Source: Macrostomum lignano (taxonomy: Eukaryota). From it: DNA of 64,000 nt. The notes under the pieces are model-generated. The model saw only the letters and a list, made by a program, of their open reading frames with translations. It searched no databases and was not told the origin of the DNA. The DNA lies in NCBI GenBank assembly GCA_002269645.1, contig NIVC01003992.1, forward strand, positions 1 to 64,000, in the 5' to 3' direction. Positions 1 to 64,000 of the stretch are shown here, piece after piece. The first letter of the stretch is position 1; each line of letters opens with the position of its first letter. Position numbers and translations under genes: made by a program.

Positions 1-9907
<9,907 letters not shown>

Positions 9908-10777
9908 CTCATGCGGCTAAAATTGTAGTTTGTCTCTAATAATTAGTAGGGTGAATATGGCTGGCGGCTCCAAAATGAAACGATGAAGATAGCTATAAGG
10001 AGAGAGGAAAGGATGAAAAATGAAGGAGGACCAAGATGGTTGGGAAGGATTTTCTTTTGGCCTAAATAGTCGGAGGCTGGTTGGGGCTGCGGCTCGGGCA
10101 GATGGTGGGTGACAAAGCGTTCAAAGTCGGGCCATTGCTTGGCGCACACGCTGCGCACACTTGCCTCATCTGCCAGACCCCAGTGCCTTCCCTCATCCCC
10201 AATCCCATCGAGGCTCTCTCTACAGACAAAAGCAACAGGCCCATATAGGCTAAGGCTACAACCCCTTACCACGGACCTCGTTTCCTGCTAGCCCCTGTCC
10301 GCCTTGCCTGAATGCGCAGGAAGGTAACAGAGAAAAGACCGTTGTGGTTCGCCGACCCAGCCCTTCCCCAGGCCCCCACCGCCCATATTGCAGTCTAGTT
10401 CGGATCAATACTGCAGAAGGAAGAGGGTGCGTCAGATGCTGAAATCTGGTATGTACGTCTTGTGGCGTTCTACAAACCAGCGATCTGGAGAGGTAGTTCG
10501 ATTTTTTAATATATCATGAGCTGCGATATTATCAGGTTTCATGGGTTTGTCATAAAATGAAACAAATAGAAGTACATGTTTGTCTCTGTTTCCTTTTATT
10601 TTTTACTTTGGTTCGTCATCTTTATTGACTTTAATATTAGTCCCCGAACATCCAGACATTGCATTTAGAGCTCCATTCGATCGCCAACTCCGCAACGCTG
10701 CATTGATGCCCAGACAACGGATATTCCTGTTGGAAAGGGGCTGTACGCTTCACCAGCCGAACTTTAATAGCTAGATG

Positions 10778-12442
10778 TACATGTACAAACTTTTGTGCTC
10801 ATGATATACAAACTGGTGTTCATCTTTATGTCGTTTTTGTCTTGCTTTAAAAAACTACATTACATGTAGGACCCTGTAGAGATTGATAGTACGACTTAAT
10901 CTGTTAAAATCTTTAGCATGTTAAAGAGATGATGGTTGTGACAACCGGCAAGGCACACTGTAATGCAGCAAAATATATTTTGGACCTACATGTAGCAGTA
11001 TACGAGCTCATGCTATTTGGTCGCTGCAGTAGTTTCTTCTCGTTAGATTTAGCTAGTAGTAATAGCATATCTAGCTGCATGACAATTAAAGGCCTAATTG
11101 ACTCCTAATTTCTACTTTATGAGATATCAGACTTTCAGCATCAGCACTAATTTGATGGCACGTCCCCTATTACTGCCAGTAGAAATAGAAATTTCTTCTT
11201 CCCTTTTTATTATCGGATCTTTTCAATATATTTACCTTTCCTCTCTCCTATCTTCGCTTCTTCCTATCCTTTGTCTCCCCTACTAATTATCTTCGCTACT
11301 TTTATGTTTTTCTTCTTTTTCATCGGGATTGTATACCAGCATACTTTTTTCGGATCATGATCATATAAATCACCAGATTGTCAAGGTATTAGACGGACAC
11401 CTGGCATGCATGCCTGCGGGTATACAGGTTCCTGATGGTCTGGGAGAATTTCTCATTTTTTGTCAATCACATAAGAATTTGGCACGTGTGACGATATATT
11501 TTGACAGCTGTGACCTTCGCCCCTACACTAAAAGTACATGTATATTCGTTTTAATCCTACAATCATCTCGCGGATTTGGCAAAATCACCTCTCCTCTTCA
11601 TCCCCGATCTAATGCATATTTCATGTTAATTTTGGACTTGAAATTGCTAAAACTCATAAATAAATTTATATAAATAAAATTGGATGATTTATGGCCGCAC
11701 CTATATCGCTTTTTGAGGATTCCCCAGGGACCTGTAGGATCTCTCGGCTTTTCAGGTCGTGGTAGCTAAATGCTTCAGCCGATCAGAAAATTAGACAGGG
11801 CGTTTAAACAAATCGGCTCAGCCAATCAAATCGATGTGTTCTAATTGTAACAAATCCCAACCCAAGCTACGAGCATAATTGGTTCCAAACAGTATTCAGT
11901 CAACCAACCATTTTGAATCAGAATTCAAGTCAGTCATGTACTTTATTGCTAACTTAGGCATCAAAGCGGCTTATATATCTACATGTATGTAAGCTAGAAC
12001 CACCAGCTACATGTAAGGGTCTCAGAGCTAGGGCTAATATATTAGTTTTTACTCACATTTTATGGCCAGAATCAATCGCATGCATAGGAATTTGATAATG
12101 TAGTACATATATGTGTATATTTCCCGAACCTATAGTCTTGCAGCCTAGCAACAAGAAGAACCCCTCTGCAAAAATATGCTATCCAGTCCGAGTACCGTCC
12201 CTTTTTCGGCTGACTTCGAGATTCAACTAAAAGACACCAGTTGGCACATCAGTTCAGAGCCTCTCCTTGAGTCGTGGTAACCCGATTTGAGAGAGAGCCG
12301 AGCGGCAGGTTTGGTGAGCCAGTTTTTGCATGAGTTGGTGGCCAGCTGATTAGCTTAATCTACGGATTAGCTATTTTTGCCTTTAAAATTCTCCTGCTTG
12401 TCTCTCGCTGTATACTTTCTTAGGTAATAGGAGCTACATGTA
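10778..12442. promoter_or_regulatory. Divergent intergenic region with seven TACATGTA palindromes and a CCAAT box
   Basis: TACATGTA at 10778, 10861, 10987, 11535, 11980, 12008, 12435; AGCCAATCA at 11820. Lies between the 5' ends of laminin (-) and the bHLH gene (+). Regulatory function is inferred only. Confidence 0.35.
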
Positions 12443-14303
12443 GCTCATGTTCGGCACATCTAAATTATGATATATTCAGATTTGCATATGTGCAAGCCGC
12501 GCCTAAGACACATAAAAAGACAGTGGCCTTGTCCGATAAATCGTGATCAACTTGCTAACGACTCTTAATTTTATACTTTTTTATTTTTAACGCAAGTTAC
12601 TGCTTTACTATTAATTAAATTTTTTTAATAATTATCAAAGAAATTTTATTCTCAGAAGTTGCATTTTTTGTTTTGATTAAACTATAGATAAAATGTTTCA
12701 AAGTCAAAAACTTCCAATTGCAGGAATTCGTAAAAGCTGTGTGAGAGAGAGTATTGAGAATGCGAGCGACATTTTTGCATCACGTCACGTTTGACATGTA
12801 CAGTTTGTAACTTAGAGTGGGAGAACCACGTATATAAGTTCGTGTATTTTTCATAGGATCTATTTCACCTTTTTTGAAGGCCGTAGAGGTTGTCCTGTCC
12901 CAAGAGTAATTGTGGAATCGAAGCAGTGCATTATCTTAATCTTATCAATGCCGAAAATTAATAAAATCTGCTAAAGTTCCTTATTTTATTTTGCTTGCAA
13001 TTTACTATAGGCCCAGATAGGCTCTCTAGTAGGCCTACTAAAGATCTAGGCCTAATCCATTTTATATCATATTTATTTATTTGAATTTATTCAGATATAT
13101 CTCATGTGCCATCCCATCTGCCATGTCCATGGCGGCAAACTGTTATTGTTTAAGATCGAACTTTTTTCGAAATTTATGATGACTAAAACCTATATTAGTT
13201 CATATTGAAAACATTATATCATTTTTGGCAGTCTTTTAGTTTTGTCCATTTGATTATTTTTCAACTGGCAACTATTGTAGCTTTAATTTAATTAACATTT
13301 TAACAAATGTTGTAAACCTTTAAGTTAAAAGGCAAAACTTATTATATTATATTTATTATTTAACTTTTTTATTTTATTATATTATAAAATAATAAAAGAT
13401 AAAAGGCAGACTTTTATCTACTATAGACATAGTTGTAGACATGGATTTTATGCTTCTTAAACTATTATATAATTAACTTGACATTGGTAAAAGTTGGCAT
13501 GACTAAGCTTGGCACAAAATCAAATTAAAAATATCTATCTCGATTATTTATGCTTTTTACCTCATCACTAGCTTGATATATAACTTGGTATAAAATCAAA
13601 TTAAATGTTCAGAACTAGAAAATCATTCATTTTTATTGCCTTTTTCATAATGAAATTAATATTTTTTTATATTTAATCATTCGCAATATATTTGATACTT
13701 AGTGGGCTAATTTAGCAATTTAACTATTTGGCTATTGAAAAAAATAAACTTTGCAATCAGTCAATCTATAGTCCAGTTTGTTGTTTATATAAGTTCAAAC
13801 AAACTATTGTAATCATTTTTAGGTATAATTATAAGATTCTAGTTATATACAAGTAAAATAGTACCAATTTTGCATACAAGTAATAGCTTTATTTGTACTA
13901 GAAATTCATACATGCGCAACACTTGGCCGATCTAGCTGACTGGCAAGGGCCCAGCCATGATAAGTTGAAAAAATATACACCCAAAATAGATATAAAAACT
14001 AATTAGATGATGAGGCATTTAGCCTTGATAAAAGAGTTATAGTTACTCCTGCTGTTTACCCAAAAGTTTTTTAGGAAGTTGCAGGGCTGGTGTAATTCAG
14101 GGGGTTGCGCATGGATGTCTAGCATAGTAGTAAATGTTTTATGATGATATAATATCTAATTAGATAATGCAGCATATAATATAAAAGCTATATTTATAAA
14201 CAAGCAATCATATTTTCAATTTATTGCATGCAATATGGTTAATACTACAAGACACTGACAGCTGATTCCATTTTTTGAGAACTTCTTTGAGCTTGCACTT
14301 TTC

Positions 14304-17300
14304 ATGGACACTGGCAATGGAGAGGACAGCATGTCCTTTCTGCTTGATCTAATATCCTCAGACGCTGGCAATGTGCAGCAGCATCAGGATGAGCCAATGA
14401 TGGATGCAGCATCTGGCGCTGGTCATTTGCAGCAGCACCAAAGCACCGCGCTTGAAGACATTGAGCCGTCTTATGAGTTGTTCCAATTCCCCACTTCTGT
14501 AGCCAATGACAGCAATGGCACTGCTACTTCCGCTAGCATACTGTGGCAACAGCTCACCATGCCGCAACCGCAGGAGCCTTCACTGACATCTAACACCAGC
14601 AACTCGGCCTTCCAACAGTACCGCAGTCACTCCAGCTGCTCAAGCTACTCAAACTTCTCCAGCTCGGTGCCATCCGTAGCCTCAACTCCTTCGCTACTGA
14701 GCGGCTTCAGCACTCCGGCGCACCCGCGGGAATGGACAGCCCGCCCGACTGTCTATGGCGCCTCCTCCGCCGCCTTGCGCGCCGACGCCACAGCCGCCGC
14801 CGCCGTTCCAGTCGATCCTGACGAGCGCAGGCGGCGCTACGCTGACGTGAACAGTCTGTCCCGACAGGAGTTGTTCGACACACTCAATCGTCGCCTGAGG
14901 CGGGTTGGCAGTTCCAGCGGCGGTGGCTTCGGCGACGGCGTCTCGTCGCCTTCGGACACGTCGGAGTCGCCGCGATGGCAGCAGCAGCATCATCATCACA
15001 GCGGCGGCAGTGGCGGTGCAACATCGTCCAGCTCGTCAGCTGCCGGCTTCTCCGTTGGCGGCGCTGCCTCAGGCGCTGCGGCAGCCGTTTCCGTCGCCGA
15101 CAATCCCGACGTTGTTGACCTGTCCGCCGCTGTCGGCGTCGGCGTCCACCTGAAAGACGAGCCAGCGACGCCGCCCTCAACGCCGTCGCGGCTGCCGCGT
15201 CACCAGCGAGAGCCGCATAAAAAGGCTGAGAAGAAACGCGTTGAAAAAATTCGTCAGAGACTCGACCAGCTGCGTGAGCTGTGCGGCATCGGCGGCGGCG
15301 GCGGCGGGGGCGCAGCTGATCGGTCAGAAGCGAAACTGCTGACTCGAGTGCTGGGCTGCATTCGGGAGCTTCAGTTGGCTAACAGGCGATCCGCTGATGA
15401 AGCTAATGCGCTTCAGGTAACTGAACTCGTAATAACTTGAGTGCTCTCACTTTGAATATCTCTTACTTTGAGAGATTAGATTCCTACATTCATATCTTGT
15501 TACTGTTCAGTAGGCAGTCTGTTATAAAGTGTTTATCGACCTGAGTCATTGAACTCTGGGTGTGTTTTTCGGCGTGGCTCATTAAACTCGGAGTGTGTTT
15601 ATCTGCTTCACTCGTTAAACTCGGAGTGTGTTTATCGGCCTGACTCATTAAACTCTAAATGTGTGTTTATCGGCCTGACTCATTAAACTCGGAGTGTGTT
15701 TATCTGCTTGACTCGTTAAACTCGGAGTGTGTTTATCGGCCTGACTCATTAAACTCTAAATGTGTGTTTATCGGCCTGACTCATTAAACTCGGAGTGTGT
15801 TTATCTGCTTGACTCGTTAAACTCTGAGTGTGTTTATCGGCCTGACTCATTAAACTCTGAGTGTGTTTATCGGCCTGACTCATTAAACTCGGAGTGTGTT
15901 TATCGGATTTGCGCATCAAATTTGGAGTGTGTTTATCGGCCTCTGTCGTTAAACTCGGAGTGTGTTTATCTGCTCGACTCATTAAACTCAGAGTGTGTTT
16001 ATCGGCTTTCCGCATTTAACTTGGAGTGTGTTTATCTGCTTCACTCGTTAAACTCGGAGTGTGTTTAGCGACAATCAAATCTGTCTAATGCAGCATATCA
16101 AAATCTCTACAGCTTAATCCGCCCCTCCCCAGGCTCGTCTTTCGGAGCTCGAATCCGAGCAGAAGACCCTTCTCGAAGCCCTTGACGACGAGGCCGCTGC
16201 GGATCATAAAGTTGACGCGGATGGCGACTCCGCTATTGAAGACTTCAGCGGCGTCAAGTTTGAATCGGGCGATGAGGCTGGCACACCGTCCGAGGACTGC
16301 GAGATGACTTCGGAGACTACCATTACTCACGACTGCAGGTAATCTTGCGGATTGGGGTAACAGGTGTTCTAATGGCTTTTTCTTGAAACTTTTTAAAAGC
16401 CATTATTTCGCACTTGCCCTTTGACATCCTGTCCTCAAGTCCCTTTGACATCCTGTCCTCATGTCCCTTTGACATCCTGTCCTCAAGTCCCTTTGACATC
16501 CTGTCCTCAAGTCCCTTTGACATCCTGTCCTCATGTCCCTTTGACATCCTGTCCTCATGTCCCTTTGACATCCTGTCATCAAGTCCCTTTGACATCCTGT
16601 CCTCAAGTCCCTTTGACATCCTGTCCTCAAGTCCCTTTGACATCCTGTCCTCAAGTCCCTTTGACATCCTGTCATCAAGTCCCTTTGACATCCTGTCATC
16701 ATGTCCCTTTGACATCCTGTCCTCAAGTCCCTTTGACATCCTGTCCTCATGTCCCTTTGGCATCCTGTCCTCATGTCCCTTTGACATCCTGTCCTCAAGT
16801 CCCTTTGACATCCTGTCCTCAAGTCCCTGTGACATCCTGTCCTTTGGGTCCATTTTACTTAAACTTCCCTGAAAGTGTATTGTTTGAGGTCGAAGTGAAC
16901 CTAAAATTTATTTAAGATTTATTAAGTTTGTCGTAAAAATTGCACATCAGACAAGGTCTGCGCTTTCAAGTGGTTCTACAACAGCGACAGCATCAGCTTC
17001 TTTATCAAAAGCTTCATCAACAGTCTCAGTCTGAGTCGGACAGTCTTTCAGCTGGCCTTGAGGCTTACTCGCGCGACCGCCTGACCTCGGGTGACCCCGG
17101 CGCAGTGCTGTTTCACCGCCTAATCGGGGGTCTGCTTGTTGATAGTTTTCGTCGAGCAGTTTTAGGCGCAGACTGCAATGAAGCTAACGGTGCCGCGGTT
17201 GCTAATGGCAACGGCGGCGACGCCGGTTTAGACTCGGTAGAATTTCGAGAAAAATTTCAGCGCTGGCTGTCTACTCTGACCGCCAGTCGGCTCAGGCGGG

Positions 17301-17344
17301 ATCTTAACCAGCGGCTGAACGAGGTGGCTGCCGATTTTGTGTAG
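14304..17344 (+). CDS. Mlx/Mondo-like bHLH-leucine zipper transcription factor, 3 coding exons, about 570 aa
   Basis: Exons 14304-15416 (CAG|gtaact, phase 0), 16133-16338 (ccctccccag|GCT ... AG|gtaatc, phase 2), 16951-17344 (catcag|A ... TAG). bHLH: HKKAEKKRVEKIRQRLDQL-loop-SEAKLLTRVLGCIREL. Splicing to exon 2 gives a heptad zipper ALQARLSELESEQKTLLEAL. The C-terminal VLFHRLIGGLLVDSFRRAV...FREKFQRWL...LRRDLNQRL resembles the Mlx/Mondo DCD pattern. Family call is by eye. Confidence 0.78.
15530..16068. repeat. 33-bp minisatellite in bHLH intron 1
   Basis: Unit CTCATTAAACTCGGAGTGTGTTTATCGGCCTGA, about 16 diverged copies. Confidence 0.93.
16417..16845. repeat. 24-bp minisatellite in bHLH intron 2
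   Basis: Unit CCCTTTGACATCCTGTCCTCAAGT, about 18 copies. Confidence 0.96.
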
Positions 17345-17691
17345 GCTAGAGAGTTTATACTCTTTTTTTCTGCGCTTGTATCATACGAGAACTTTTTAAA
17401 AGAATCATTAAATAGCTACTATATAAGTAAGCTTTTTCGGTCATCACGAGCATTTTTTACATTGATTTGAAATTTTGTCATTATTTATCAATATAGCTTT
17501 ACTATACGCGTTACTTTTTTTTCGAAATCGTGTTTCTTGATATTGATTTTTTGGCTTTCATTTCATCAGTCATTCGTCATCTTTTCCTTTTCGAGTTCAA
17601 TAATGGGCATTAGTTCTGAAAAGTTCCGGCTTAAGATAATCATTCTTAATTCTATTTTCCAGGGGTTAGAAAAATAATTTAGAAAAACTTC

Positions 17692-17940
17692 CCAATCAAC
17701 TCCTTCCCCAATGTACACACTCCAATCAACCTTTTTCTCCAGAGTACATACCCCAATCAACTTCTTCCCCCAATGTACGCATCCCAATTAACTCCCCCCT
17801 AATGTACACACCCCAATCAACCCTTCCCTCAATGTTCGCTCTCCAATCAACTCCTTCCCCCAATGTACACACCCTAATCAACCCCCCAATGTACACACAC
17901 CCGATGAACCCCTTCCCCCATTATACGCACCCCAATCACA
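17692..17940. repeat. Degenerate ~30-bp minisatellite
   Basis: About 8 copies of CCAATCAACTCCTTCCCCAATGTACACAC-like units. Confidence 0.8.
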
Positions 17941-18438
17941 ATCAAACAATTTTTCTATTTCGCACTCAGAAGCCGAATTACGAATTAGCGAGATTTCCCA
18001 CAGGTTTTGTTTAATATAAACATTGTCTGTAGTACTTGTAAATAATACGAGCGTATCTATTTTCATAGTAACTATAGCAAGTCATTTGGACAGTTTTTGT
18101 TTGATTTTTAAATTAGCTTTGCAATCAAATTAAGGAAAAACTTTTATTTTTGAGTGAAAACTTTTCTTCATTAAGTTTTTGCAAAGTTTCTGCTGTTGGC
18201 TTCGGCTTCCTTGTTGTTTTTGTATTTTGTATTAACTAACTGCCTTCTTTCAAGCTTTTGATTATACAGCAAATTTATCCACGACTGAGTTGGCAAGTGT
18301 TGCTTGAGTCGGAGAGATAATACATTTATTTGCCTGACAACTTACACAAATAGAAACTATACTACACCTTACTATTGAGCCATTCTTGTTCTTGTTACAA
18401 TCTCAGTGCATGGTCGGTTCAGATCTTGAAAGCTGGGT

Positions 18439-19203
18439 CTGAAGATGAGCAATGAGTTCTGGATTGAGAATCGGAATCTCCCTTCTAAAGATGAGCATTG
18501 AGTTGTGGATTGAGAATCGGAATCTCCTAAAGATGAGCATTGAGTTGTGGATTGAGAATCGGAATCTCCTAAAGATGAGCATTGAGTTGTGGATTGAGAA
18601 TTGGAATCTCCTAAAGATGAGCATTGAGTTGTGGATTGAGAATCGGAATTTCCCTTCTAAAGATGAGCATTGAGTTGTGGATTGAGAATCGGAATTTCCC
18701 TTCTAAAGATGAGCATTGAGTTGTGGATTGAGAATCGGAATCTCCCTTCTAAAGATGAGCATTGAGTTGTGGATTGAGAATCGGAATCTCCCTTCTAAAG
18801 ATGAGCATTGAGTTCTGGATTGAGAATCGGAATCTCCCTTCTAAAGATGAGCAATGAGTTCTGGATTGAGAATCGGAATCTCCCTTCTAAAGATGAGCAT
18901 TGAGTTCTGGATTGAGAATTGGAATCTCCCTTCTAAAGATGAGCAATGAGTTCTGGATTGAGAATCGGAATCTCCCTTCTAAAGATGAGCATTGAGTTCT
19001 GGATTGAGAATTGGAATCTCCCTTCTAAAGATGAGTATTGAGTTGTGGATTGAGAATCGGAATCTCCCTTCTAAAGATGAGCATTGAGTTCTGGATTGAG
19101 AATCGGAATCTCCCTTCTAAAGATGAGCATTGAGTTCTGGATTGAGAATCGGAATCTCCTAAAGATGAGCACTGAGTTGTGGATTAAGAATCGGAATCTC
19201 CCT
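18439..19203. repeat. 46/42-bp minisatellite
   Basis: Unit CTAAAGATGAGCATTGAGTTCTGGATTGAGAATCGGAATCTCCCTT, with 42-bp variants. Confidence 0.96.
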
Positions 19204-20798
19204 TTTTATCAAAACTGCAGGAGTAATCTGATGAAATAGGGCTATTGTGTATTGTACGTTGATTGATATGCTATTTTCAATTGATAGAGAATAAATTTAG
19301 TATTGTGCGGGCTAGGAAAAAAGCGATTTGGTAACTCTCCGCTGGACGAATGCGTTCACGCACGCTGCTGCAAGTAGCTGACACTAACAAGTAGCGGTTC
19401 GACAGCGAAGAAAGATTTGATGGAGACTGGGCTAGGCTAAATTTGCAGCTATTTGGTCAGCGAAAGCATTCCAGCTATGCTGCCATCCATCTTCAGTGCA
19501 CGCCTGCTAGGCTTTAGGCACTTCGGCTGCTATGCCGGTCTGCATGGTCGGGGCGCACGACTTCGGGCCTGTAAGCTGCAGTCTAACTTGACCCCGGCTG
19601 ACCCACAAAGCCCAAGCCTTTCGCCGACTTTGGGCATAAACAGCTACTCCCCCCTTTCAAGCAGATGCGCAGTTTAGCGTCCGATTCCTTGCGCCGAATG
19701 CCGGATATAATACCTGGGGGAGGGGCCCATTACGCACCGGCTGGTGTAATTGTTGGCCTGCTTGGGGAAATAAGGAGAACGGAACAGCGGAAGAAAGAAC
19801 ATGACGAACCGTCGGCAACAAATTCGTCTCTGTACAGATTTTTTCTCGCACTTTCAAGTTTCCTCTGAAATTGCTGCAACGTTTTTTGCCTCTGGTCTGG
19901 CTCTTCCATATCTGAAAATTCTGACCAATTCTTTTAGTAAGCATTTTAATCTTAACGGTTTTACCCATTGGCAATTTAAGTTGAGGGTCGACCGCTACAC
20001 TTGCGAATCGTGAAACTTTGTTGTTTTTCGCTGCAAAATGCATTAGCAATATTCCTACTAATATGGGAAACCTTTAAGACCTTCAGCATGATGAGAAGCT
20101 TTAAAATAAGGAGTCATTCTGTTAGTGATTTTCATAAGACAGTCAAATATGCATACACAAACAAATAGCTTGATTGATTTTACGCAATTCAAACGAGAAA
20201 TCTTTAAGGTCTGTACTTACAGTTTGTTTTGGCCTTTATCGGGACTCTAAAATGATTTTATCAAACAGAATAAATCATAATAGTTGTTCTAGCCAAAGGC
20301 AACTCCTCCCTTTGAGGCTGCAATCTTCAGCGCAATCCTGTTTGTGGTAGGTCCTCAGCACAGGCGGGAGCAGAAAAAGGATAAACAAAAGAAACAAAAA
20401 CGACAGAGAGGCGATCTGCATGGGCTGGACGGGGAGAGAAATTCGATCCTGAAAAAAGAGGAAAATGCCCATTCCCGCTTCCCCTATCCGATGGCTTACG
20501 GTTGCAGAGCAATTATCTGTGGCCTTGACGCCACCAAGGCCTACAGAGTCCTGTCAGGAATTCCACCCTTGTTTAACACGTCATGATTGACGCTTTTGGA
20601 AAACCGTATTCCTAGCGACAGTACCTATACGTCTTAAGTGCACCTATGTTGCTGCGAAAGCACTAATTTTGCTTGTTAAGTACCAACCCCTGTAATGCTT
20701 GAAACCTTTTTACTCTAGAAAGTTTTAGGCGTTGTTTGCCCTTTAGCGGTGTTGTCTTTGTGGTCGTGGACAATAAACTTATGAACAGGTTTTAGCTA

Positions 20799-21110
20799 TA
20801 ATTAATAATAATAATTGATTACACCTGCCCTAATGGGCAGATGTGCAACGGACAGCTCAGCCGCAGCTATTGCGCGGCGCATCTGAAGGCTGCGTACGGC
20901 TGTTCAGCCCAAGGACTGGGGGGTCGCCACACACACCCTCAATTACCCCAGCTAATGCTGGCACCCACCCATTTTACAGCTGGGTGAACTGAAGCAATGC
21001 AGAGTTAAGTGGTCTTTCTCAAGGACACAAATTGTTCCGAGTGGGTCGAGAATCGAACCCCCGACCTTTCAGTCGTGAAGCCGACGCTCTAATCACTAGG
21101 CTACAACCCC
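20799..21110 (-). mobile_element. CORE-like tRNA-derived SINE (about 312 bp) with 9-bp TSD
   Basis: Head GGGGTTGTAGCCTAGTGATTAG...GAAAGGTCGGGGGTTCGATT (A and B boxes, tRNA-Val-like). Central TGTGTCCTTGAGAAAGACCACTTAACTCTG...CAGTTCACCCAGCTGTAAAATGGG resembles the MIR CORE domain. 3' hairpin CTGCCC-ATTA-GGGCAG (20825-20840), (ATT)n tail, and TSD TTTTAGCTA at 20790-20798 and 21111-21119. Confidence 0.88.
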
Positions 21111-22112
21111 TTTTAGCTAGCTCATATCCAACCTAGCATGCTAACTTCCGGCGGCCGGATGGCCAGCAACACTGACACACCATCAGTTCATGAACATGGG
21201 CCTGTTCTGCTAAAATTTCTGCCGAATTTGTCTATGACAAAATCTGAATCAGCGCTGTGCAGTATGACATAGTTTTCAAAATTTTTCCTCAACAAACTTG
21301 TGACTGCACCTTGAAGGAAACGCACACTTGCCTAACACGGAATTCAAATGTCCAGAAGTGGAGATAGTCAGAATTTGGCGCTCTATCTTAGGCTACAGCG
21401 GGAATAAAGTTTTAAATTTATAGCACAGTATTGCTTATCAACCACAGACACTTTTCTTTCATCTTTTCGGTAAGCACTAACAAGACTCTTGTATCAAACC
21501 TTTGGCCAAGCTCTTGATTCAATCCTGACTCCGTTGAATTAGTATTTTTTGGACCTGTCTGCTTGGTCTCATCAAAGCCTGTAATCAGAGCTGCACAGCT
21601 CAGGCCCCTATCTGCTGAGCTTCTACACTTCCTGTGAGACTGTCGAGACTGTCGACTCCATCAAAGGGAAGAAATTGCGTTGTGTAGAGGCAGTAGTGGC
21701 ATGGTAGCACACATGATGAAGTGGAGGCTTTGATCTTGTAGGCCTACTGGTTATGTATAAAAAGTCGCTTGATGAATACCTCAATAACCTTCACTATGCA
21801 TAGATGTGCTGCTTGTAATGTTCTCCGAGAGACGTACTGGTATGTCCTAGTGATGAGTCGAAAAAGTCAACCAATTAATCCTAATGACCATACATGTGAG
21901 CTTTTTACTACTTTCTAATCTAACTATTAATGCTTTTCCCAGCGAAGCAGATTCACAGTTAAAATTAATTTCAGAAGAATCTAGTATAAAACCGAATATT
22001 AATGTCGACGACGCGACCCTCTGTCGTCATCGCGCCCTGTCCCGTCCAAGCGACCTGTTGCGCCGGCGGGGACTCCAGCCGGCAGGTCACTTCATCCTGC
22101 TGCTGACGTGGC

Positions 22113-23578
22113 CACACAACTTATACAGAATGCTCAGTCAGCGTTTTTTTAGAATAAAACTGAGTAGAAATAGATGCGCGCTCACACTACTTTGTCGATG
22201 AAGAGGAATGAGTAGCCATAGACTATAGCTGTGACTTGCGTTAAAACTGCTATGCGATAGTCGATTTTGCAGTACAAAAGGCACTAACTCAAGGTATCAT
22301 ATCTTTTTATGTATCATACTGTTTTAAATGGTTTAAATGTACGTTTTTTATTCAAATGATGCAAGTATACATGCTCATAAAAGGAAAACATACTTTGATA
22401 AAGTCCGTCATAAGAACAATGTAGGCAATGCAATACAAGAATTATTCATTGTTTAGCAATTTGACGATCATTATTCACATTTTTAATGCAGAACAATCCA
22501 CTACTACAAACAATGCATTGTCTGTAGGATCGTCAAACAGAAAAACAATGCAAAGAATCAGCGGTCGCAGCACGTGACAACGATTTGTCTATGGCTCGCG
22601 CCTACCGGCGCTCGCCAGACAATCGTTATCACGCACTGGGACCGCTGATTATTTATCCATTATTCCGGTTTTCTTTTAGCAGGCGAACCAAAGTTGCTCT
22701 CGGGACGGGTTTCCTTCCCTTTGGCTAATCATGCCGCTCACTTGCAGTCTCGGCAAAACCAGAAACATCGTTTTCGTTTTGTACTTTACCACTTACGCGA
22801 GTTTGATGCAGAGATGCTGGAGAATCAGTTCTCTGCTTTGGAAGCGGCCGATGTATTTGCTTTGTTACGGCTTGCTTGTAGAGCTTTAGCGTAGAAATTG
22901 CATTCCAAGCAAGTCGACTGTGAGCCTCGTGACGATTTTTCGGACACATGTACATGTGGTCCTCGAAGTCATGACTGCATACAACTGCATTCGCCCATTT
23001 GTGCTCGAACAGCTTCTTGCCTATAAGGTCAGCTCGGAATATCCGGCGAGCCCAATCTTCACACCTGTAATGTTAATTATATCAGTCGCAGTTGCTAAAT
23101 GTAGATAAAGGTACGAAGGCTTCTACAGAAAGAATGACGAAGTTGGTCATTTCGCAATCTGCAACTCACCGATCACGGTCTGATGGAAACCTGTGGAATC
23201 GTGTTCCAGGTGGACATTCAAAAGCGTAGTTTGGGCAGCCGTAGGCTGCGCACTGTGTCCGTGATTTTGCAGATGGCATAAAGCAATTAGCTTCTCAGCA
23301 TTTTGCTTAGCAAAAATTCTTCTTCCTCTCTTAATACTCAAAGCCACGCAGTCCAAAGCACGGATTTTGTATTATCTAGACGGGTAACTTTGTTGAGACT
23401 CTCGCAACATACTAAGCCTTCGCCTCATAGGCGCTCGCGGAAACCCCGAGGTTTTGGCCATAGACAAACCTATGGCTACTCATTCCTCTTCATTGACAAA
23501 GTAGTGTGAGCGCGCATCTATTTCTACTCAGTTCTATTCTAAAAAAACGCTGACTGAGCATTCTGTGTAAGTTCTGTG
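22113..23578 (-). mobile_element. Non-autonomous P-superfamily (THAP) DNA transposon, 1466 bp
   Basis: 109-bp terminal inverted repeats at 22113-22221 and 23470-23578 with 4 mismatches; termini CACAC/CACAG; exact 8-bp TSD GACGTGGC at 22105-22112 and 23579-23586; internal spliced THAP ORF; too short to encode a transposase. Confidence 0.9.
22725..23279 (-). CDS. THAP zinc-finger DNA-binding domain protein, truncated transposase N-terminus, inside the transposon
   Basis: Exon 23279-23170 MPSAKSRTQCAAYGCPNYAFECPPGTRFHRFPSDRDR (CG|gtgagt). Exon from 23064 (ttacag|G) CEDWARRIFRADLIGKKLFEHKWANAVVCSHDFEDHMYMCPKNRHEAHSRLAWNAISTL. THAP signature C-x4-C, FxFP, W, VCS..F and an AVPT-like box. The second exon ends either at a GTAAGT donor (22796) or reads on to TAG at 22725. 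Confidence 0.85.
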
Positions 23579-24451
23579 GACGTGGCCTTAACCATCAAGG
23601 TCTGGCAAAGTCTACGTTCGCGCCCAAGCCCTGTGACGCTGTTCTCATTCTGAGACTTCCTACAGCGTATCTTGTGGCGGTTTTATATCTAAACTAGATT
23701 CTAACAGAACTTTGTGATTTACTTACCGGACTCGGCTGCAGGGGGTTCCGGCATCGGGATACAGCGAGCCCTAGCGACCGCGGGCAGCTGATGTCGCGTA
23801 GGGAGATCCGGTGGTGCCGGCGTCCGCAGCGCGGTCCTCCTCCAGAGAGGGAGCGGACGAGCTGGCAGAGATTCTCGGGCCTGAAAATGTCTGAAGGGTC
23901 CAAGTTTTCCCCCAACTGGGTGAGCCTGTCCTGAGTAAATTAGGTCCTGAGTAGAGACATCGATAAAGTGCTCCGCATTCTCAACACCGAAGCGGCAGAA
24001 TTTTATTCCCTGGAGGTAGCGATGCCTTACAATAGGACCCAAGTTTTTTGCATTTGTAAAGCGCATCAGATCAACAGACTTTCTTTGCACCCTAGCAAGA
24101 TAATGCAGCCCCCCACGTAGTTATCGTACAAATATACACACACACACACTGACCATCTGTTGATTTCACCTCTATATCAATCGCTCATATCGCATGTATA
24201 CCGCGCTCTTATCGAGCTGTTCTTATTTAGTCTGTGCACCAAAGCTGTCCCGTTAAGCCACGCCAGGTGCAGGGAAAAGGAGAGAAGAAGAGCACCTGTC
24301 AATCACACTGGCGCCCCGCCTATGATATCAGAGAGTCATCCCAGCAGCTAGAAGCTACTGTACAGTATAGCGAGCGATTCAGGTGGCTAAAAAGATGGCG
24401 ACGGCCTTATCTTTGTCTCTCTCTCTTTCTCGCTCTCTTTTTAAGGGCGGA

Positions 24452-24490
<39 letters not shown>

Positions 24491-24814
24491 GGTTCCGGCT
24501 TCATCGAGCCCGCAGTCGACCAACGATAGTCCCTAATACTCGCAATAATGTGAATGTCACTAGTACGTTCGTTAAATACCCAAGGTGTCAGTCATGTGTG
24601 CTTGGGGCTGAAGAGTAAAGGAATCGCATAAATTTCAAGTGGAGGATGTACAAATTTAATGCTTGAGAACTGAATAAATAGCTAAAAAAGGAATACACAA
24701 AGATCATAACAGAATCAGTAACAAAAAATTGAAACCCTGAAAGCAGTTTACAAAGCGCGAAAACAGAGGGAGATTAAAGAGAAAAATCTGAATAATCGAG
24801 AGAGACACAGAAGC

Positions 24815-25735
24815 GGGTAGAGTCACAGAGACGCGAGGAGAGTCACAGAGACGCATGGAAAGAGTCACAGAGACGCGGGGAGAGTCACAGAGACGCGAGG
24901 AGAGTCACAGAGATGCGAGGAGAGTCACAGAGATGCGAGGAGAGTTACAGAGATGCGAGGAGAATCACAGAGACGCGAGGATAATCACAGAGACGCGAGG
25001 AGAGTCACAGAGACGCGAGGAGAGTCACAGAGACGCGAGGAGAGTCACAGAGACGCGAGGAGAGTCACAGAGACGCGAAAAGGGTCACAGAGACGCGAAG
25101 AGAGTCACAGAGACGCCTGGAAAGAGTCACAGAGACGCGAGGAGAGTCACAGAGACGCGAGGAGAGTCACAGAGACGCGAGGAGAGTCACAGAGACGCGA
25201 GGAGAGTCACAGAGATGCGAGTAGAGTCACATTGACGCCGGGGAGAGTCACAGAGACGCGGGGAGAGTCACAGAGACGCGAGGAGAGTCACAGAGACGCC
25301 TGGAAAGAGTCACAGAGACGCGGGGAGAGTCACAGAGATGCGAGTAGAGTCACAGAGACGCCGGGGAGAGTCACAGAGACGCATGGAAAGAGTCACAGAG
25401 ATGCGGGGAGAGACACAGAGACGCGGGGAGAGTCACAGAGATGCGGGGAGAGACACAGAGACGCGGGGAGAGTCACAGAGACGCGAGGAGAGTCACAGAG
25501 ACGCGAGGAGAGTCACAGAGATGCGAGGAGAGTCACAGAGATGCGAGGAGAGTCACAGAGACGCGAGGAGAGTCACAGAGACGCGAGGAGAGTCACAGAG
25601 ATGCGAGTAGAGTCACAGAGACGCGGGGAGAGTCACAGAGATGCGGGGAGAGACACAGAGACGCGGGGAGAGTCACAGAGATGCGGGGAGAGACACAGAG
25701 ACGCCGGGGAGAGTCACAGAGACGCGAGGGGAGAC
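24815..25735. repeat. 20/21-bp purine-rich minisatellite
   Basis: Unit GAGAGTCACAGAGACGCGAG with variants, about 45 copies. Confidence 0.95.
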
Positions 25736-27299
25736 AACGACAGAGCAGGCACATGGCAGCAGACGTGGGAAGGAATGCGTGCGGCGTGTACCCCACTCTG
25801 ACCTCGGATTGGGTCGCCCAGGGACACGCACGCCACGCCCGCCCCTCTAGTCACCGCATGGGGGGAGTGAAACACCAAATAGAAAGCGGACCCTCTGCAC
25901 TCCGCAGTTTCCGCGGAGGCAGCTCCGTCTGCGCCATCCCAGCAGCCAACCGGCAGAACTGCAGCAGCTCCCCAACCCCTGCACATCCGCAGTTCTCGAG
26001 CGCCCACGCAATTCGCCTCGGGCCGGACGGCCTCGTATAAATCGGCGTCTCTTTCATAGGCTGGTAGCTTCCTAAAGCCTAATTCGTGTTTTAAACCTAC
26101 CTGGCGATCAAGCCTTTTTGAAAGTATTTCTTGTCCAATGGTTTTGAGGATCAATCGAGGTGAGTATTGTAGGCAGCTAGCTATAAGAAAGTTCAACTTT
26201 TTATAATCTCTCATCCCAAAACCCAGATCCAAAAAGAAGAAATTATCGCGAGAAGCTGGAGGGGCACCATTTTCAGACAGAGCTTTAGTAGGCAAAAAGA
26301 CGAGAAGAAACCTGGAAGCTTTCTACAAGTTTATAAATGTTTACAAGAAAAGAGACGGTGCATGGATGCATCTAGATAAGCCAGTTTTTTCAGCTTGTAT
26401 TTATTATTTGCAAACTAAGTTCCATAAGCAGTTTGAAGAGAGCCGCCGCCTTAATCATGCTGAACAGAGAGAGGAAGTGAGGCTAAGGCCGATCGTTCAC
26501 GCTGCCCACTAGGCTTGCATCAAGGCAATTTCCAGGAATGCGCACTAACACCACGCTTAGCGGTATCCTGTGCATCCGCCGGAGTGGGCAGAGGGAGAGA
26601 GAGAGGAGACACAAAATGCGGCAGCTGGGATGTGAAATTCGCCAGAAAAATATATTTTGGGGTTTTGCCGGACTGCTTCTGATAAACAGAGCCATACATT
26701 GGCCATCGCTTAAACCCAATTTTGCTGCTGCAATTCCGCATTCCGAATGTTTCTCTCCTAGTTGCTAGCGGCAATTAATTTGAATTCAACCTCAATGCGG
26801 ACGACAAGCAATAAATTGTTTATTAGAAGGAAAAATAGCGTATTTCTGTTGGTTATAATACTGTAGATGGGTAAAATCATTGTATATAGTTTATGAGCGT
26901 AAAAATGCGCATATTCTTACCCCTAAGACTTTACACCTGCCTTTATAGCTTGGGTTGCTCCTACACCTGTACTCCTACTGACGGAAGGTGACAAGATTCA
27001 CTGTGCCGTTTTGTAATAAGGTGGTTGGGATTAAGTTACTTTTGAGCTTGCTCTAGTGTTCATTGAGCCCGATTCATCAACTCACTCGTCATTCCTACGT
27101 AGCGAAGCCACGTTTCTACAGCGACTAGAATTTCTTCATAGTTTTCCATATGTCTACATCTTTGATGACGGCTAATTCGCTAAAAGTACATTTGGCTTGA
27201 CTTTATCAAGTCCGTACTAATGTTCTTAACTTGGCTGATTGTCAATTGGAGCTTATTTTGCTTCTCATTGCTGTGGCTTAGTTATAAATTAGTTTTTTT

Positions 27300-27508
27300 A
27301 TATCCCGGATGTACAGTTCTCTATCCCGGATGTACAGTTCTCTATCCCGGATGTACAGTTCTCTATCCCGGATGTACAGTTCTCTATCCCGGATGTACAG
27401 TTCTCTATCCCGGATGTACAGTTCTCTATCCCGGATAGACAATTCTCTACCCCGGATGTACAGTTCTCTAACCCCGGATGGACAATTCTCTACCCCGGAT
27501 GTACAGTT
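27300..27508. repeat. 21-bp minisatellite
   Basis: Unit TATCCCGGATGTACAGTTCTC, about 10 copies. Confidence 0.95.
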
Positions 27509-28204
27509 CTGCACGTACTATCAATGTAGTTCTTTTAGTTCTTTGCGTACTCTGAATGTACACTATATAGTTCTCCATCCCGAACGTAAAGCGCTCAGTT
27601 TTTCATCCTGTTTAAAACAATGCGTCACTCTCAACTCTATCAAATTAGAAAAAGCCATTTTCAGCCTCATTCCTGAAATCAGCATCAGAGCAGGAACCAT
27701 GCGGCATACAGTTTTAATATTCACTAAATCGGTTTCGGATGACTGCGTTTCCACACGCGTTGATTTTCGCTTTTAATCAGATTGTATCGCAGCAAAACCA
27801 GCTGCCTCAGCGTCCCTGCAGTTGGCATTGATTCCCTATCAGCGGTGTAGCTGGTTTGAAGGAAATCGAGGAGAGACATTGTAGCTAACAGTGATCTCAA
27901 AAAAGCGGGGCGCATGACCGGTCACCCAGACAGAACGCGGAACCCACGCGAGCATGCTGCACAGGCAGAGAGAGAAATCGACAAAAGGGGCAGTGATAAT
28001 ATAAAAATAAAAATTGTTGCTTTCTGATCAATACAGCCAGGGAGACACAGAGCCAGAACCCGGAGTGCTGAATCTTTGACTCAAAATCGGTGTAGAATCA
28101 GAAAAAAACTTAGATCGGGACTAGCTCATAAGTATTGGTTGGATTGCTTAGAATGTAAATGATCTTTCTCTGAGACTACGCAGAATCTTTTTAGGCTGGA
28201 AAGT

Positions 28205-47505: not shown

Positions 47506-64000
<16,495 letters not shown>

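What the first reader, a model, noticed from the sequence alone, without database searches (positions are those of the whole stretch)
22105..23586. Miniature P-superfamily transposon retaining only a spliced THAP gene: KP-like repressor candidate
Seen: 8-bp TSD GACGTGGC, 109-bp TIRs (4 mismatches), CACAG-type terminus, 1466 bp in total, and a two-exon THAP ORF with canonical splice sites and its own stop, but no catalytic region. Established: P elements make 8-bp TSDs and carry an N-terminal THAP domain, and the internally deleted Drosophila KP element encodes a THAP-containing repressor of transposition. Inference: an independent KP-like derivative in a non-insect animal, which could encode a self-regulating repressor or be raw material for a domesticated THAP factor. 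Neither exon is properly captured by the ORF track.
Basis: partly seen in the sequence, partly recalled or inferred. Interest (0 to 1): 0.78.

Follow-up and report, generated by a model that had tools for sequence, protein, structure and literature searches.

The report
Decaying deletion copy of P-type transposon
This is a 1.5-kb non-autonomous P-type DNA transposon in the flatworm Macrostomum lignano that keeps only the DNA-binding front end of its lost transposase gene, and that remnant is damaged, so it is an ordinary decaying transposon copy and not a likely self-made repressor.

Summary
An 8-bp target-site duplication (GACGTGGC) flanks a 1,466-bp element (22113-23578) with 109-nt terminal inverted repeats (4 mismatches). 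A two-exon minus-strand ORF encodes a 149-aa THAP protein (Pfam E=1.8e-10).

The window is Macrostomum lignano contig NIVC01003992.1. P-superfamily origin is well supported. The nearest relative that keeps more of the gene (L002) shares the terminal motif and the exact intron position and phase. Its ORF runs on into a P-type RNase H domain. Related elements also show 8-bp duplications.

The KP-like repressor idea is not supported for this copy:
- The "own stop" is a premature nonsense codon. Homology to the parental ORF continues in frame for 23 codons past it and ends just as the coiled-coil region begins.
- Two of the eight signature THAP residues are lost: the zinc-ligand His is Asp69 and the AVPTIF Pro is Ser94.
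- The only second copy found sits at the same site in a paralogous contig, so it arose by duplication, not transposition.
- The two copies differ by 3 nonsynonymous and 1 synonymous change, and the coding part is no better conserved than the non-coding part.
- No gene model covers it.

Genome-wide copy number, a same-subfamily autonomous parent and transcription could not be tested.

The parts
22105..22112 (.). Left copy of the 8-bp target-site duplication GACGTGGC
   Evidence: Identical to 23579-23586. The same duplication is present at the paralogous locus L017.
22113..22221 (+). Left terminal inverted repeat, 109 nt, starting CACACAACTTATACAGAATGCTCAGTCAGCG. This is the 3' end of the element relative to the gene.
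   Evidence: Four mismatches to the right arm. Position 22117 is C here but G (CACAG) in paralog L017. The terminal ~30 nt are homologous to the ends of L001, L002 and L003. Contains GCCATAGAC at 22215-22223.
22222..22446 (.). AT-rich interior of unknown origin (37% GC). Presumed 3' untranslated or subterminal DNA of the parent. AATAAA lies on the minus strand at about 22352.
   Evidence: No protein or DNA similarity to any relative in hand.
22447..22654 (.). Two adjacent imperfect ~100-bp palindromes (22447-22550 and 22552-22654). They directly abut the point where homology to the parental ORF ends. The second carries an inverted GCCATAGACAAA motif at 22584-22595.
   Evidence: I2-I4. DNA fold -59.8 kcal/mol, z = -12; 12-nt inverted match to 23457-23468. 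Origin unexplained; candidates are filler from abortive gap repair or parental 3' subterminal repeats.
22656..22724 (-). Post-stop remnant of the parental transposase ORF. It has 23 in-frame codons (PKGRKPVPRATLVRLLKENRNNG) followed by TAA at 22655-22653. Homology ends here, so this is the inferred deletion breakpoint.
   Evidence: tblastn of P0004 runs through the stop to 22656; the GR[KR]...L..KLK.E motif aligns with L002, L003 and P0008.
22725..23064 (-). Exon 2 of the THAP ORF (aa 37-149) plus the TAG stop at 22727-22725. Holds C66-S-H68-D69-F70, with D69 at 22968-22970 where relatives have His. Also holds S94 at 22893-22895 where relatives have Pro.
   Evidence: The four differences from paralog L017 are one synonymous change (A63) plus R87Q, L111P and H148D.
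23065..23169 (-). Intron, 105 nt, GTGAGT...TTACAG, phase 2
   Evidence: The same position and phase are seen in L002 (72-nt intron) and L003.
23170..23279 (-). Exon 1 of the THAP ORF (ATG at 23279; aa 1-36 plus 2 nt). Holds C10, C15 and P32.
   Evidence: Identical in paralog L017. 74% DNA identity to L002 exon 1.
23280..23469 (-). 5' untranslated or subterminal region between the right TIR and the ATG. GCCATAGACAAA lies at 23457-23468.
   Evidence: The GCCATAGAC motif recurs about 110-200 bp from the 5' end in L001, L002 and L004. It is a candidate transposase-binding or promoter element; this is inference only.
23470..23578 (-). Right terminal inverted repeat, 109 nt, ending ...CTGTG. Its reverse complement starts CACAGAACTTACACAGAATGCTCAGTCAGCG.
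23579..23586 (.). Right copy of the 8-bp target-site duplication GACGTGGC

Best explanation
The element is a non-autonomous P-superfamily DNA transposon of Macrostomum lignano.

Inferred origin: it derives from an autonomous P-like element whose gene encodes THAP, a linker, a coiled coil and an RNase H domain with a GTP-binding insertion. An internal deletion removed everything downstream of about codon 172.

Shown: what remains is both 109-nt TIRs, the 5' leader, THAP exon 1, the intron, and the first part of exon 2.

Inferred from P-element biology: it could move only if a related P-type transposase, supplied in trans, bound its subterminal sites and cut and pasted it. That process makes the 8-bp duplication seen here.

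Shown: the insertion predates a segmental or homeolog duplication, because an almost identical copy sits at the same site on a second contig.

Shown (lesions) and inferred (their effect): the THAP reading frame is a decaying remnant and not a working gene. It carries a nonsense codon before the dimerisation region. It has lost the zinc-ligand His and the invariant AVPTIF Pro. It has changed since the duplication at the same rate and in the same pattern as non-coding DNA.
For: - Structure: TSD, TIRs and size are confirmed and are far beyond chance.
- THAP domain: Pfam E=1.8e-10.
- Species and locus: window 4265-27344 is 100% identical to M. lignano NIVC01003992.1. The host bHLH ORF is 98% identical to a M. 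lignano protein.
- P-type relatives: all close THAP relatives are M. lignano proteins or unnamed contigs. P0004/L002 is 47% identical over 140 aa and carries PF21787 TNP-like_RNaseH_N at E=1.6e-20. P0120 is 62% identical to P0004 and adds PF21788, the GTP-binding insertion domain. More distant full-length hits have the whole P architecture.
- Shared termini: CACAGAA..CAGAATG(C/G) in the window, L001, L002 and L003.
- Shared intron position and phase.
- Further 8-bp TSDs in the family: GTTGCAAG in L001 and GTCTTTGC in L002.
- Premature stop: homology continues in frame after the TAG.
- Signature residues: D69 where 122/123 have H; S94 where 88/92 have P. PMC3479173 and PMC3698922 list these among the eight conserved THAP residues, and PMC3479173 reports that single mutations of them abrogate DNA binding.
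- Paralogous copy: L017 has the same insertion at 99.1% identity. Exon 2 shows 3 nonsynonymous and 1 synonymous difference. Divergence is 0.89% in the CDS, 0.69% in element non-coding DNA and 1.65% in the flanks.
- Annotation: no gene is called on the element at either locus.
Against: - No autonomous parent with the same TIRs, or with more than 90% identity, was found. The nearest element with a catalytic part is only about 50% identical in protein and comes from an unidentified sample (SRR31628394). The 'deletion derivative' step is therefore inferred from a cousin, not from the parent.
- Apart from the critical lesions the copy is only lightly mutated. It has 2 private changes at clade-invariant THAP columns, no more than its relatives.
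- His68 sits next to the lost ligand and might substitute for it.
- With 3 nonsynonymous and 1 synonymous change, moderate constraint cannot be statistically excluded.
- The element is less diverged between paralogs than its flanks (0.75% against 1.65%, borderline). This is unexplained.
- Transcription and genome-wide copy number were not testable.
Confidence: 0.8

Rival explanations
1. KP-like type II repressor. The 149-aa THAP-only protein is expressed from the deleted element, occupies transposase-binding sites in the family's ends, and damps transposition.
For: - An intact ATG, canonical splice sites and a full-length Pfam THAP match.
- Six of the eight signature residues are kept.
- Exon 1 is identical between the paralogs.
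- Small non-autonomous P elements can encode repressors such as the 207-aa KP protein (PMC7776569).
- A conserved subterminal motif, GCCATAGAC, could be a binding site.
Against: - The zinc-ligand His is Asp and the AVPTIF Pro is Ser. C2CH mutations abolish site-specific binding of KP (bioRxiv 10.1101/2020.10.06.328815), and the equivalent mutations abolish DNA binding in THAP1 (PMC3479173).
- The stop lies before the Leu-rich coiled coil that KP uses to dimerise, and the rest of that region is deleted.
- Only two copies were found, at homeologous sites.
- Substitutions are 3 nonsynonymous to 1 synonymous, and the CDS is not better conserved than non-coding DNA.
- No gene model covers it.
Confidence: 0.07
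2. A THAP host gene in the course of domestication, in which the transposon-derived ORF is being co-opted as a cellular DNA-binding factor.
For: - The insertion is retained at both paralogous loci.
- THAP domains have been domesticated repeatedly from P elements (PMC3698922).
Against: - Both TIRs and the TSD are intact. It is still a transposon, not an immobilised gene.
- Signature residues are lost.
- No sign of purifying selection.
- No annotated gene.
- Retention at two paralogous loci is what a neutral insertion that predates a duplication would show anyway.
Confidence: 0.03
3. A member of another superfamily: hAT (also 8-bp TSD), Kolobok (also THAP-bearing), or a Mutator-like element with long TIRs.
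For: - An 8-bp TSD is shared with hAT.
- THAP domains also occur in Kolobok transposases (PMC6004289 title and context).
- Long TIRs are typical of MULEs.
- The direct repeat can be read as 9 nt.
Against: - The nearest relatives with catalytic domains match only the P-type Pfam families PF21787, PF21788, PF21789 and PF12017.
- The TSD is not TTAA.
- Reading the repeat as 9 nt breaks the terminal inverted symmetry.
- Family members L001 and L002 show unambiguous 8-bp TSDs.
Confidence: 0.02
4. Not a simple deletion derivative. Instead, a chimeric or rearranged element in which the 3' half (22222-22654, with its two hairpins) was acquired from elsewhere. Sources could be a nested mini-insertion or filler DNA. 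The long TIR may have formed by copying one end onto the other.
For: - The interior 22222-22654 matches nothing in any relative.
- Two strong palindromes lie exactly at the homology breakpoint.
- The 109-nt TIR is much longer than the ~27-34-nt TIR of L001.
Against: - No 3' end of any autonomous relative is available for comparison, so the lack of a match is uninformative.
- No TSDs flank the hairpins.
- This reading is compatible with the best explanation and does not exclude it.
Confidence: 0.08

Closest known systems
Internally deleted non-autonomous P elements of Drosophila melanogaster (0.5-2.8 kb), including KP
   Same: - Both ends are kept and an 8-bp TSD is made.
- The interior of the transposase gene is lost.
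- The N-terminal THAP coding part is retained because it lies next to the 5' end.
- Movement depends on transposase supplied in trans (PMC7776569).
   Different: - KP keeps the first 199 aa, including an intact C2CH THAP and the Leu-rich coiled coil. It is amplified in natural populations.
- This copy stops at aa 149, before the coiled coil.
- It has lost the zinc-ligand His and the AVPTIF Pro.
- It was found only as two homeologous copies.
- Its TIRs are 109 nt, against 31 nt in the Drosophila P element.
- The intron position is unrelated to the Drosophila introns.
Zebrafish Pdre / THAP9-like P elements with internally deleted copies
   Same: A P-type element outside insects with 8-bp TSDs and internally deleted copies (PMC7776569, PMC10983969).
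   Different: - Pdre has 13-bp TIRs and 12-bp internal inverted repeats. Here the TIRs are 109 nt with a CACAG terminus.
- Different phylum (Platyhelminthes).
- No full-length copy of this subfamily is in hand.
Galileo / 1360 (P superfamily elements with long TIRs) and the BuT5 MITE-P element partnership
   Same: - Long TIRs occur within the P superfamily.
- Short non-coding or barely coding derivatives are mobilised by a P-type master element (PMC3698922).
   Different: - Galileo and 1360 make 7-bp TSDs and are intronless.
- BuT5 has no coding capacity.
- This element makes 8-bp TSDs and retains a spliced THAP remnant.
Related Macrostomum lignano short element at L001/L019 (gene models Mlig030330.g1/g2)
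   Same: - The same clade: homologous termini (CACAGAATACACCAGAATGCTCA) and an 8-bp TSD (GTTGCAAG).
- A THAP exon 2 with 49% aa identity.
- About 1.0 kb long and also truncated before the catalytic domain.
- Also present as a homeologous pair.
   Different: - It lacks THAP exon 1 entirely.
- It keeps more of the coiled-coil region.
- Its TIRs are short (~27-34 nt).
- It is annotated as a partial gene.

Membership tests
P superfamily of DNA transposons (non-autonomous member) | 8-bp target-site duplication | tested here: met
   GACGTGGC on both sides. Relatives show GTTGCAAG (L001/L019) and GTCTTTGC (L002). The P element makes 8-bp TSDs (PMC3698922, PMC7776569).
P superfamily of DNA transposons (non-autonomous member) | Terminal inverted repeats whose ends are homologous to those of elements encoding a P-type transposase | tested here: met
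   109-nt TIRs. The terminal ~25-30 nt align with the 5' ends of L002 and L003, whose ORFs carry PF21787.
P superfamily of DNA transposons (non-autonomous member) | Coding remnant homologous to a P-type transposase: N-terminal THAP followed, in relatives, by an RNase H domain with a GTP-binding insertion | tested here: met
   THAP at E=1.8e-10. 47% identity over 140 aa to P0004, which continues into TNP-like_RNaseH_N. P0120 adds TNP-like_GBD. The intron position is identical.
P superfamily of DNA transposons (non-autonomous member) | Own catalytic domain (autonomy) | tested here: not met
   tblastn with six P-type transposases finds only the THAP part in the element and in the whole window. 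The element is therefore non-autonomous. This does not affect superfamily assignment.
P superfamily of DNA transposons (non-autonomous member) | A same-subfamily autonomous parent exists in the same genome | not testable with these tools
   No tool searches the M. lignano genome by DNA. Protein searches returned no M. lignano protein with a catalytic domain in this clade.
KP-type (type II) P-element repressor | Intact C2CH THAP DNA-binding domain | tested here: not met
   D69 replaces the His ligand, where 122/123 relatives have H. S94 replaces the invariant Pro, where 88/92 have P. These residues are required for DNA binding (PMC3479173; bioRxiv 10.1101/2020.10.06.328815).
KP-type (type II) P-element repressor | Coiled-coil / leucine-rich dimerisation region retained in the ORF | tested here: not met
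   The TAG at 22727-22725 precedes the region. Only about 20 codons of it survive, after the stop, and the rest is deleted.
KP-type (type II) P-element repressor | Expressed | not testable with these tools
   No RNA data are available. No gene is called on the element at either locus in the NCBI annotation, which is weak negative evidence.
KP-type (type II) P-element repressor | Amplified and/or selectively maintained | tested here: inconclusive
   One copy in the window. One more at the same site on a paralogous contig. 3 nonsynonymous to 1 synonymous; CDS 0.89% against non-coding 0.69%. The genome-wide count is not available.
hAT superfamily | BED zinc finger / hAT dimerisation domain in the transposase; 8-bp TSD | tested here: not met
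   The 8-bp TSD is met, but the encoded domain is THAP and relatives carry only P-type catalytic Pfam families.
Kolobok superfamily | TTAA target-site duplication (THAP may be present) | tested here: not met
   The TSD is the 8-bp GACGTGGC, not TTAA.
Domesticated THAP gene | Immobilised (TIRs lost) and under purifying selection | tested here: not met
   Both TIRs and the TSD are intact. There is no excess of synonymous change and signature residues are lost.

The most novel reading that the evidence does not exclude
Despite the lost canonical His, the neighbouring His68 (C-X1-H spacing) could complete a non-canonical zinc site. The 149-aa monomeric THAP protein would then be expressed in the germline or in neoblasts. 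It would compete with a still-active Macrostomum P-like transposase for GCCATAGAC-type subterminal sites. That would make it an independently evolved, coiled-coil-less KP analogue in a flatworm.
Probability: 0.05. Interest if true: 0.5.

Novelty: new member of a known kind. Interest (0 to 1): 0.18.

Why it matters
In itself it matters little. Internally deleted P-type elements that keep the 5' THAP coding part are the expected by-product of P-element biology, and P-like elements are already known well outside insects.

There are two modest points of value:
- It documents a diversified clade of P-like elements in Macrostomum lignano, a regeneration and transgenesis model. The clade has defined ends (CACAGAA...CAGAATGCTCA), 8-bp TSDs, a conserved intron and a candidate subterminal binding motif. 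That is useful for repeat annotation. If an active autonomous copy exists, it might also serve as a transposon tool.
- It is a worked example of why an intact-looking spliced THAP ORF inside a deletion derivative should not be read as a repressor without checking the eight signature residues and the dimerisation region.

Tried and rejected
- Exact-protein look-ups of P0001 and of the 76-aa exon-2 ORF found nothing on record.
- A metagenome scan with the TIR pattern CACAGAANNNANNCAGAATGCTCA returned 12 loci. All are chance bacterial matches with no THAP, transposase or TIR similarity.
- A genome-contig scan with a P-transposase alignment gave 25 pattern hits, none confirmed.
- A genome-contig scan with a gapped TIR pattern gave 37 hits against about 35 expected by chance, none related.
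- Rfam found no RNA family in the window.
- I looked for a second related element near window 6514, where GCCATAGAC also occurs. No family termini were found, so I treat it as chance.
- I looked for remnants of the transposase C-terminus in 22222-22655 and for similarity to L001's 3' region. There were none.
- A word-index protein search with P0004 returned only 3 proteins and missed known relatives. Its silence about M. lignano autonomous copies is therefore uninformative.
- A literature search for P elements in Macrostomum found no paper.
- hAT, Kolobok, MULE and a host gene with chance inverted repeats were considered and rejected. The reasons are given under the rivals and the membership tests.
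Full report
**1. Observation**

- GACGTGGC occurs at 22105-22112 and 23579-23586.
- Between the two copies lies a 1,466-bp element (22113-23578). Its ends form a 109-nt inverted repeat with four mismatches.
- The 31-nt terminal sequence occurs nowhere else in the 64-kb window, with 0 expected by chance.
- A regex for an 8-mer, then CACA[GC]...[GC]TGTG, then the same 8-mer picked out only genuine family elements in about 150 kb of Macrostomum and related DNA.

On the minus strand there is a two-exon ORF.
- The ATG is at 23279 and opens a 110-nt exon.
- A 105-nt GTGAGT...TTACAG intron follows (23169-23065).
- The second exon ends at a TAG at 22727-22725.
- The product is 149 aa and matches Pfam THAP over the whole profile at E=1.8e-10.
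- The nearest solved structures are the THAP2 and THAP1 THAP domains.

**2. Where the window comes from**

A 378-aa ORF at 14304-15440 with half a bHLH domain is 98% identical to a Macrostomum lignano protein. The contig that encodes a cluster-mate of that protein is 100% identical to window 4265-27344, at the same coordinates. The window is therefore M. lignano assembly GCA_002269645.1, contig NIVC01003992.1, positions 1-64000. The region is packed with minisatellites.

**3. Superfamily**

All close THAP relatives are M. lignano proteins or unnamed environmental or Logan contigs. The informative relative is P0004, on the 1,788-nt contig L002.
- L002 begins exactly at an element end (cCACAGAATATACAACAGAATGG...).
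- Its first exon is 110 nt, the same length as in the window.
- Its intron (72 nt) sits at the same codon and phase as in the window (...R|CEDW).
- Its ORF then runs uninterrupted through the THAP domain, a linker and a Leu/Lys-rich coiled-coil-like stretch into Pfam TNP-like_RNaseH_N at E=1.6e-20.

Other relatives agree.
- L003, a second contig, has the same end motif, the same intron site and the same catalytic domain.
- P0120 is 62% identical to P0004 and adds the P-specific GTP-binding insertion domain.
- More distant full-length hits (834-907 aa) show the complete P architecture of THAP, HTH, RNaseH_N, GBD and RNaseH_C.
- A ~1.0-kb relative in M. lignano (L001) has the homologous termini and an unambiguous 8-bp TSD, GTTGCAAG.

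An 8-bp TSD together with THAP and this catalytic domain defines the P element family (PMC3698922, PMC7776569). hAT is excluded by its different zinc finger and catalytic domain. Kolobok is excluded because its TSD is TTAA.

**4. What the ORF really is**

tblastn of P0004 against the window does not stop at the TAG. It continues in the same frame for 23 more codons. Window PKGRKPVPRATLVRLLKENRNNG aligns with CGRKPTPPVAMIRKLKAEQRENA, down to 22656, where a TAA follows and all homology ends. The motif GR[KR]...L..KLK.E aligns in four family members. Three things follow:
- The deletion breakpoint lies at about 22655.
- What would have been the dimerisation region is either behind the stop or deleted.

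I aligned the 117 THAP hits of the exhaustive search to the window protein. The window departs from two nearly invariant columns.
- Position 69 is Asp where 122 of 123 sequences have the His of the C2CH zinc signature. The window reads C-S-H-D-F and relatives read C-S-Q/L/H-H-F.
- Position 94 is Ser where 88 of 92 have the Pro of the C-terminal AVPTIF motif.
- The few other exceptions at these columns are misaligned or degenerate sequences.

These are two of the eight conserved THAP residues (PMC3698922). In THAP1, single mutations of the CCCH ligands or of the four invariant residues abolish DNA binding (PMC3479173). C2CH mutations abolish site-specific binding of the KP repressor, which also dimerises through the leucine-rich region that this copy lacks (bioRxiv 10.1101/2020.10.06.328815).

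**5. A second copy and the test for selection**

A paralogous contig of the same assembly, L017 (NIVC01001069.1), is colinear with window 10650-27815 at about 97-98% identity. It carries the same element at the same site with the same TSD. The insertion therefore predates that duplication, or haplotype split.

The two element copies differ at 12 positions.
- One difference restores CACAG at the left end in L017.
- Four differences fall in exon 2: one synonymous, plus R87Q, L111P and H148D.
- The stop, D69 and S94 are shared by both copies.

Divergence is 0.89% in the CDS, 0.69% in the rest of the element and 1.65% in the flanks. The coding part is no better conserved than non-coding DNA, and the ratio of 3 nonsynonymous to 1 synonymous matches the neutral expectation. 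The numbers are small, so moderate constraint cannot be excluded statistically.

The related short element L001 also has only a homeologous twin with the same TSD. No gene is annotated on the element at either locus.

**6. Mechanism**

Shown:
- the element has the ends and the TSD of a P-type transposon;
- it carries no catalytic domain.

Inferred from P-element biology (PMC7776569):
- it arose by internal deletion of an autonomous copy;
- it could be moved only by a related transposase supplied in trans;
- that transposase would bind subterminal sites.

A candidate binding site is GCCATAGAC.
- It occurs three times in the element: 22215 (+), 23457 (+) and 22587 (-).
- It also occurs about 110-200 bp from the 5' end in L001, L002 and L004.
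- This is a lead, not a demonstrated site.

The present-day ORF most likely does nothing. I put the probability that it acts as a KP-like competitor at about 0.05-0.07.

**7. Loose ends**

- Two strong ~100-bp palindromes (22447-22550 and 22552-22654; DNA fold z = -12) sit exactly at the breakpoint. They may be repair filler or parental 3' subterminal repeats. I could not decide, because no 3' end of an autonomous relative is available.
- The element is less diverged between paralogs than its flanks. The difference is borderline and unexplained.
- Genome-wide copy number, a same-subfamily parent and transcription could not be tested. The collection scans that were available returned only chance hits.

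**8. Verdict**

This is a real, cleanly bounded, non-autonomous P-superfamily element in a flatworm. It is a new member of a known kind. The repressor or domestication interpretation is not supported for this copy. Interest is low.

Noticed in passing
L002 378-418 (Logan contig SRR31628394_1802338): Inside the 5' leader of a P-like element there is a 25-bp perfect palindrome, CACAGAATATAC-A-GTATATTCTGTG. It consists of 12 nt of each family terminus and is flanked by an 8-bp direct repeat, GTCTTTGC. This looks like a P-type excision footprint or an 'ends-only' remnant of a nested insertion. It fits the 17-nt staggered cleavage of P transposase (PMC7776569) and suggests recent activity of the family in that organism.
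   Followed up: partly
L017 19354-20818 (M. lignano NIVC01001069.1), colinear with window 10650-27815: A paralogous or homeologous copy of about 17 kb of the window, at about 97-98% identity, carries the same element and the same TSD. This fits the recently duplicated M. lignano genome. The element is about half as diverged as its flanks (0.75% against 1.65%).
   Followed up: yes
L001 9762-10781 and L019 4765-5798 (M. lignano NIVC01001600.1 / NIVC01000695.1): A ~1.0-kb related P-like deletion derivative with TSD GTTGCAAG and short TIRs. It lacks THAP exon 1 but keeps part of the coiled-coil region. It is annotated as partial genes Mlig030330.g1/g2. The two copies are homeologous duplicates, not separate insertions.
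   Followed up: yes
window 22215-22223, 22587-22595, 23457-23465; L001 9910; L002 197; L004 208: The 9-mer GCCATAGAC recurs in subterminal positions of four related elements. Three of its five occurrences in the 64-kb window lie inside the 1.5-kb element. Its reverse complement, GTCTATGGCA, in L001 and L002 resembles the TxxGGCA core bound by THAP1. It is a candidate transposase-binding site.
   Followed up: partly
window 22447-22654: Two adjacent ~100-bp imperfect palindromes lie at the exact point where homology to the transposase ORF ends (DNA fold -59.8 kcal/mol, z = -12). Their origin is unexplained.
   Followed up: partly
window 4900-5700, 15529-16843, 18438-19204, 24800-25733, 27301-59073 (many arrays): There are about 25 distinct micro- and minisatellite arrays (periods 4-127 nt, up to 1.8 kb each) across the window. 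Most long 'ORFs' there are repeat artefacts. An inverted pair of GATA/CTAT arrays lies at 53034-53744 and 54732-55104.
   Followed up: no
window 14304-15440 (+): First exon of a host gene with half a bHLH domain (Pfam HLH E=2.6e-4). It is 98% identical to M. lignano BOX15_Mlig028484g1 and 100% identical to the locus of Mlig021082g1. The element lies about 7 kb downstream of this exon.
   Followed up: partly
L004 (GCA_036350755.1 JAZBNS010000480.1, 'Kangiellaceae bacterium' MAG); L003 (JGI 3300040801): A protein deposited as bacterial (MEE4247030.1) is a fragment of a P-type transposase (RNaseH_N + GBD) that is 62% identical to the Macrostomum-clade element. The contig is most likely animal DNA mis-binned into a MAG. 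L003 carries a frameshift just after the CEDW motif.
   Followed up: partly
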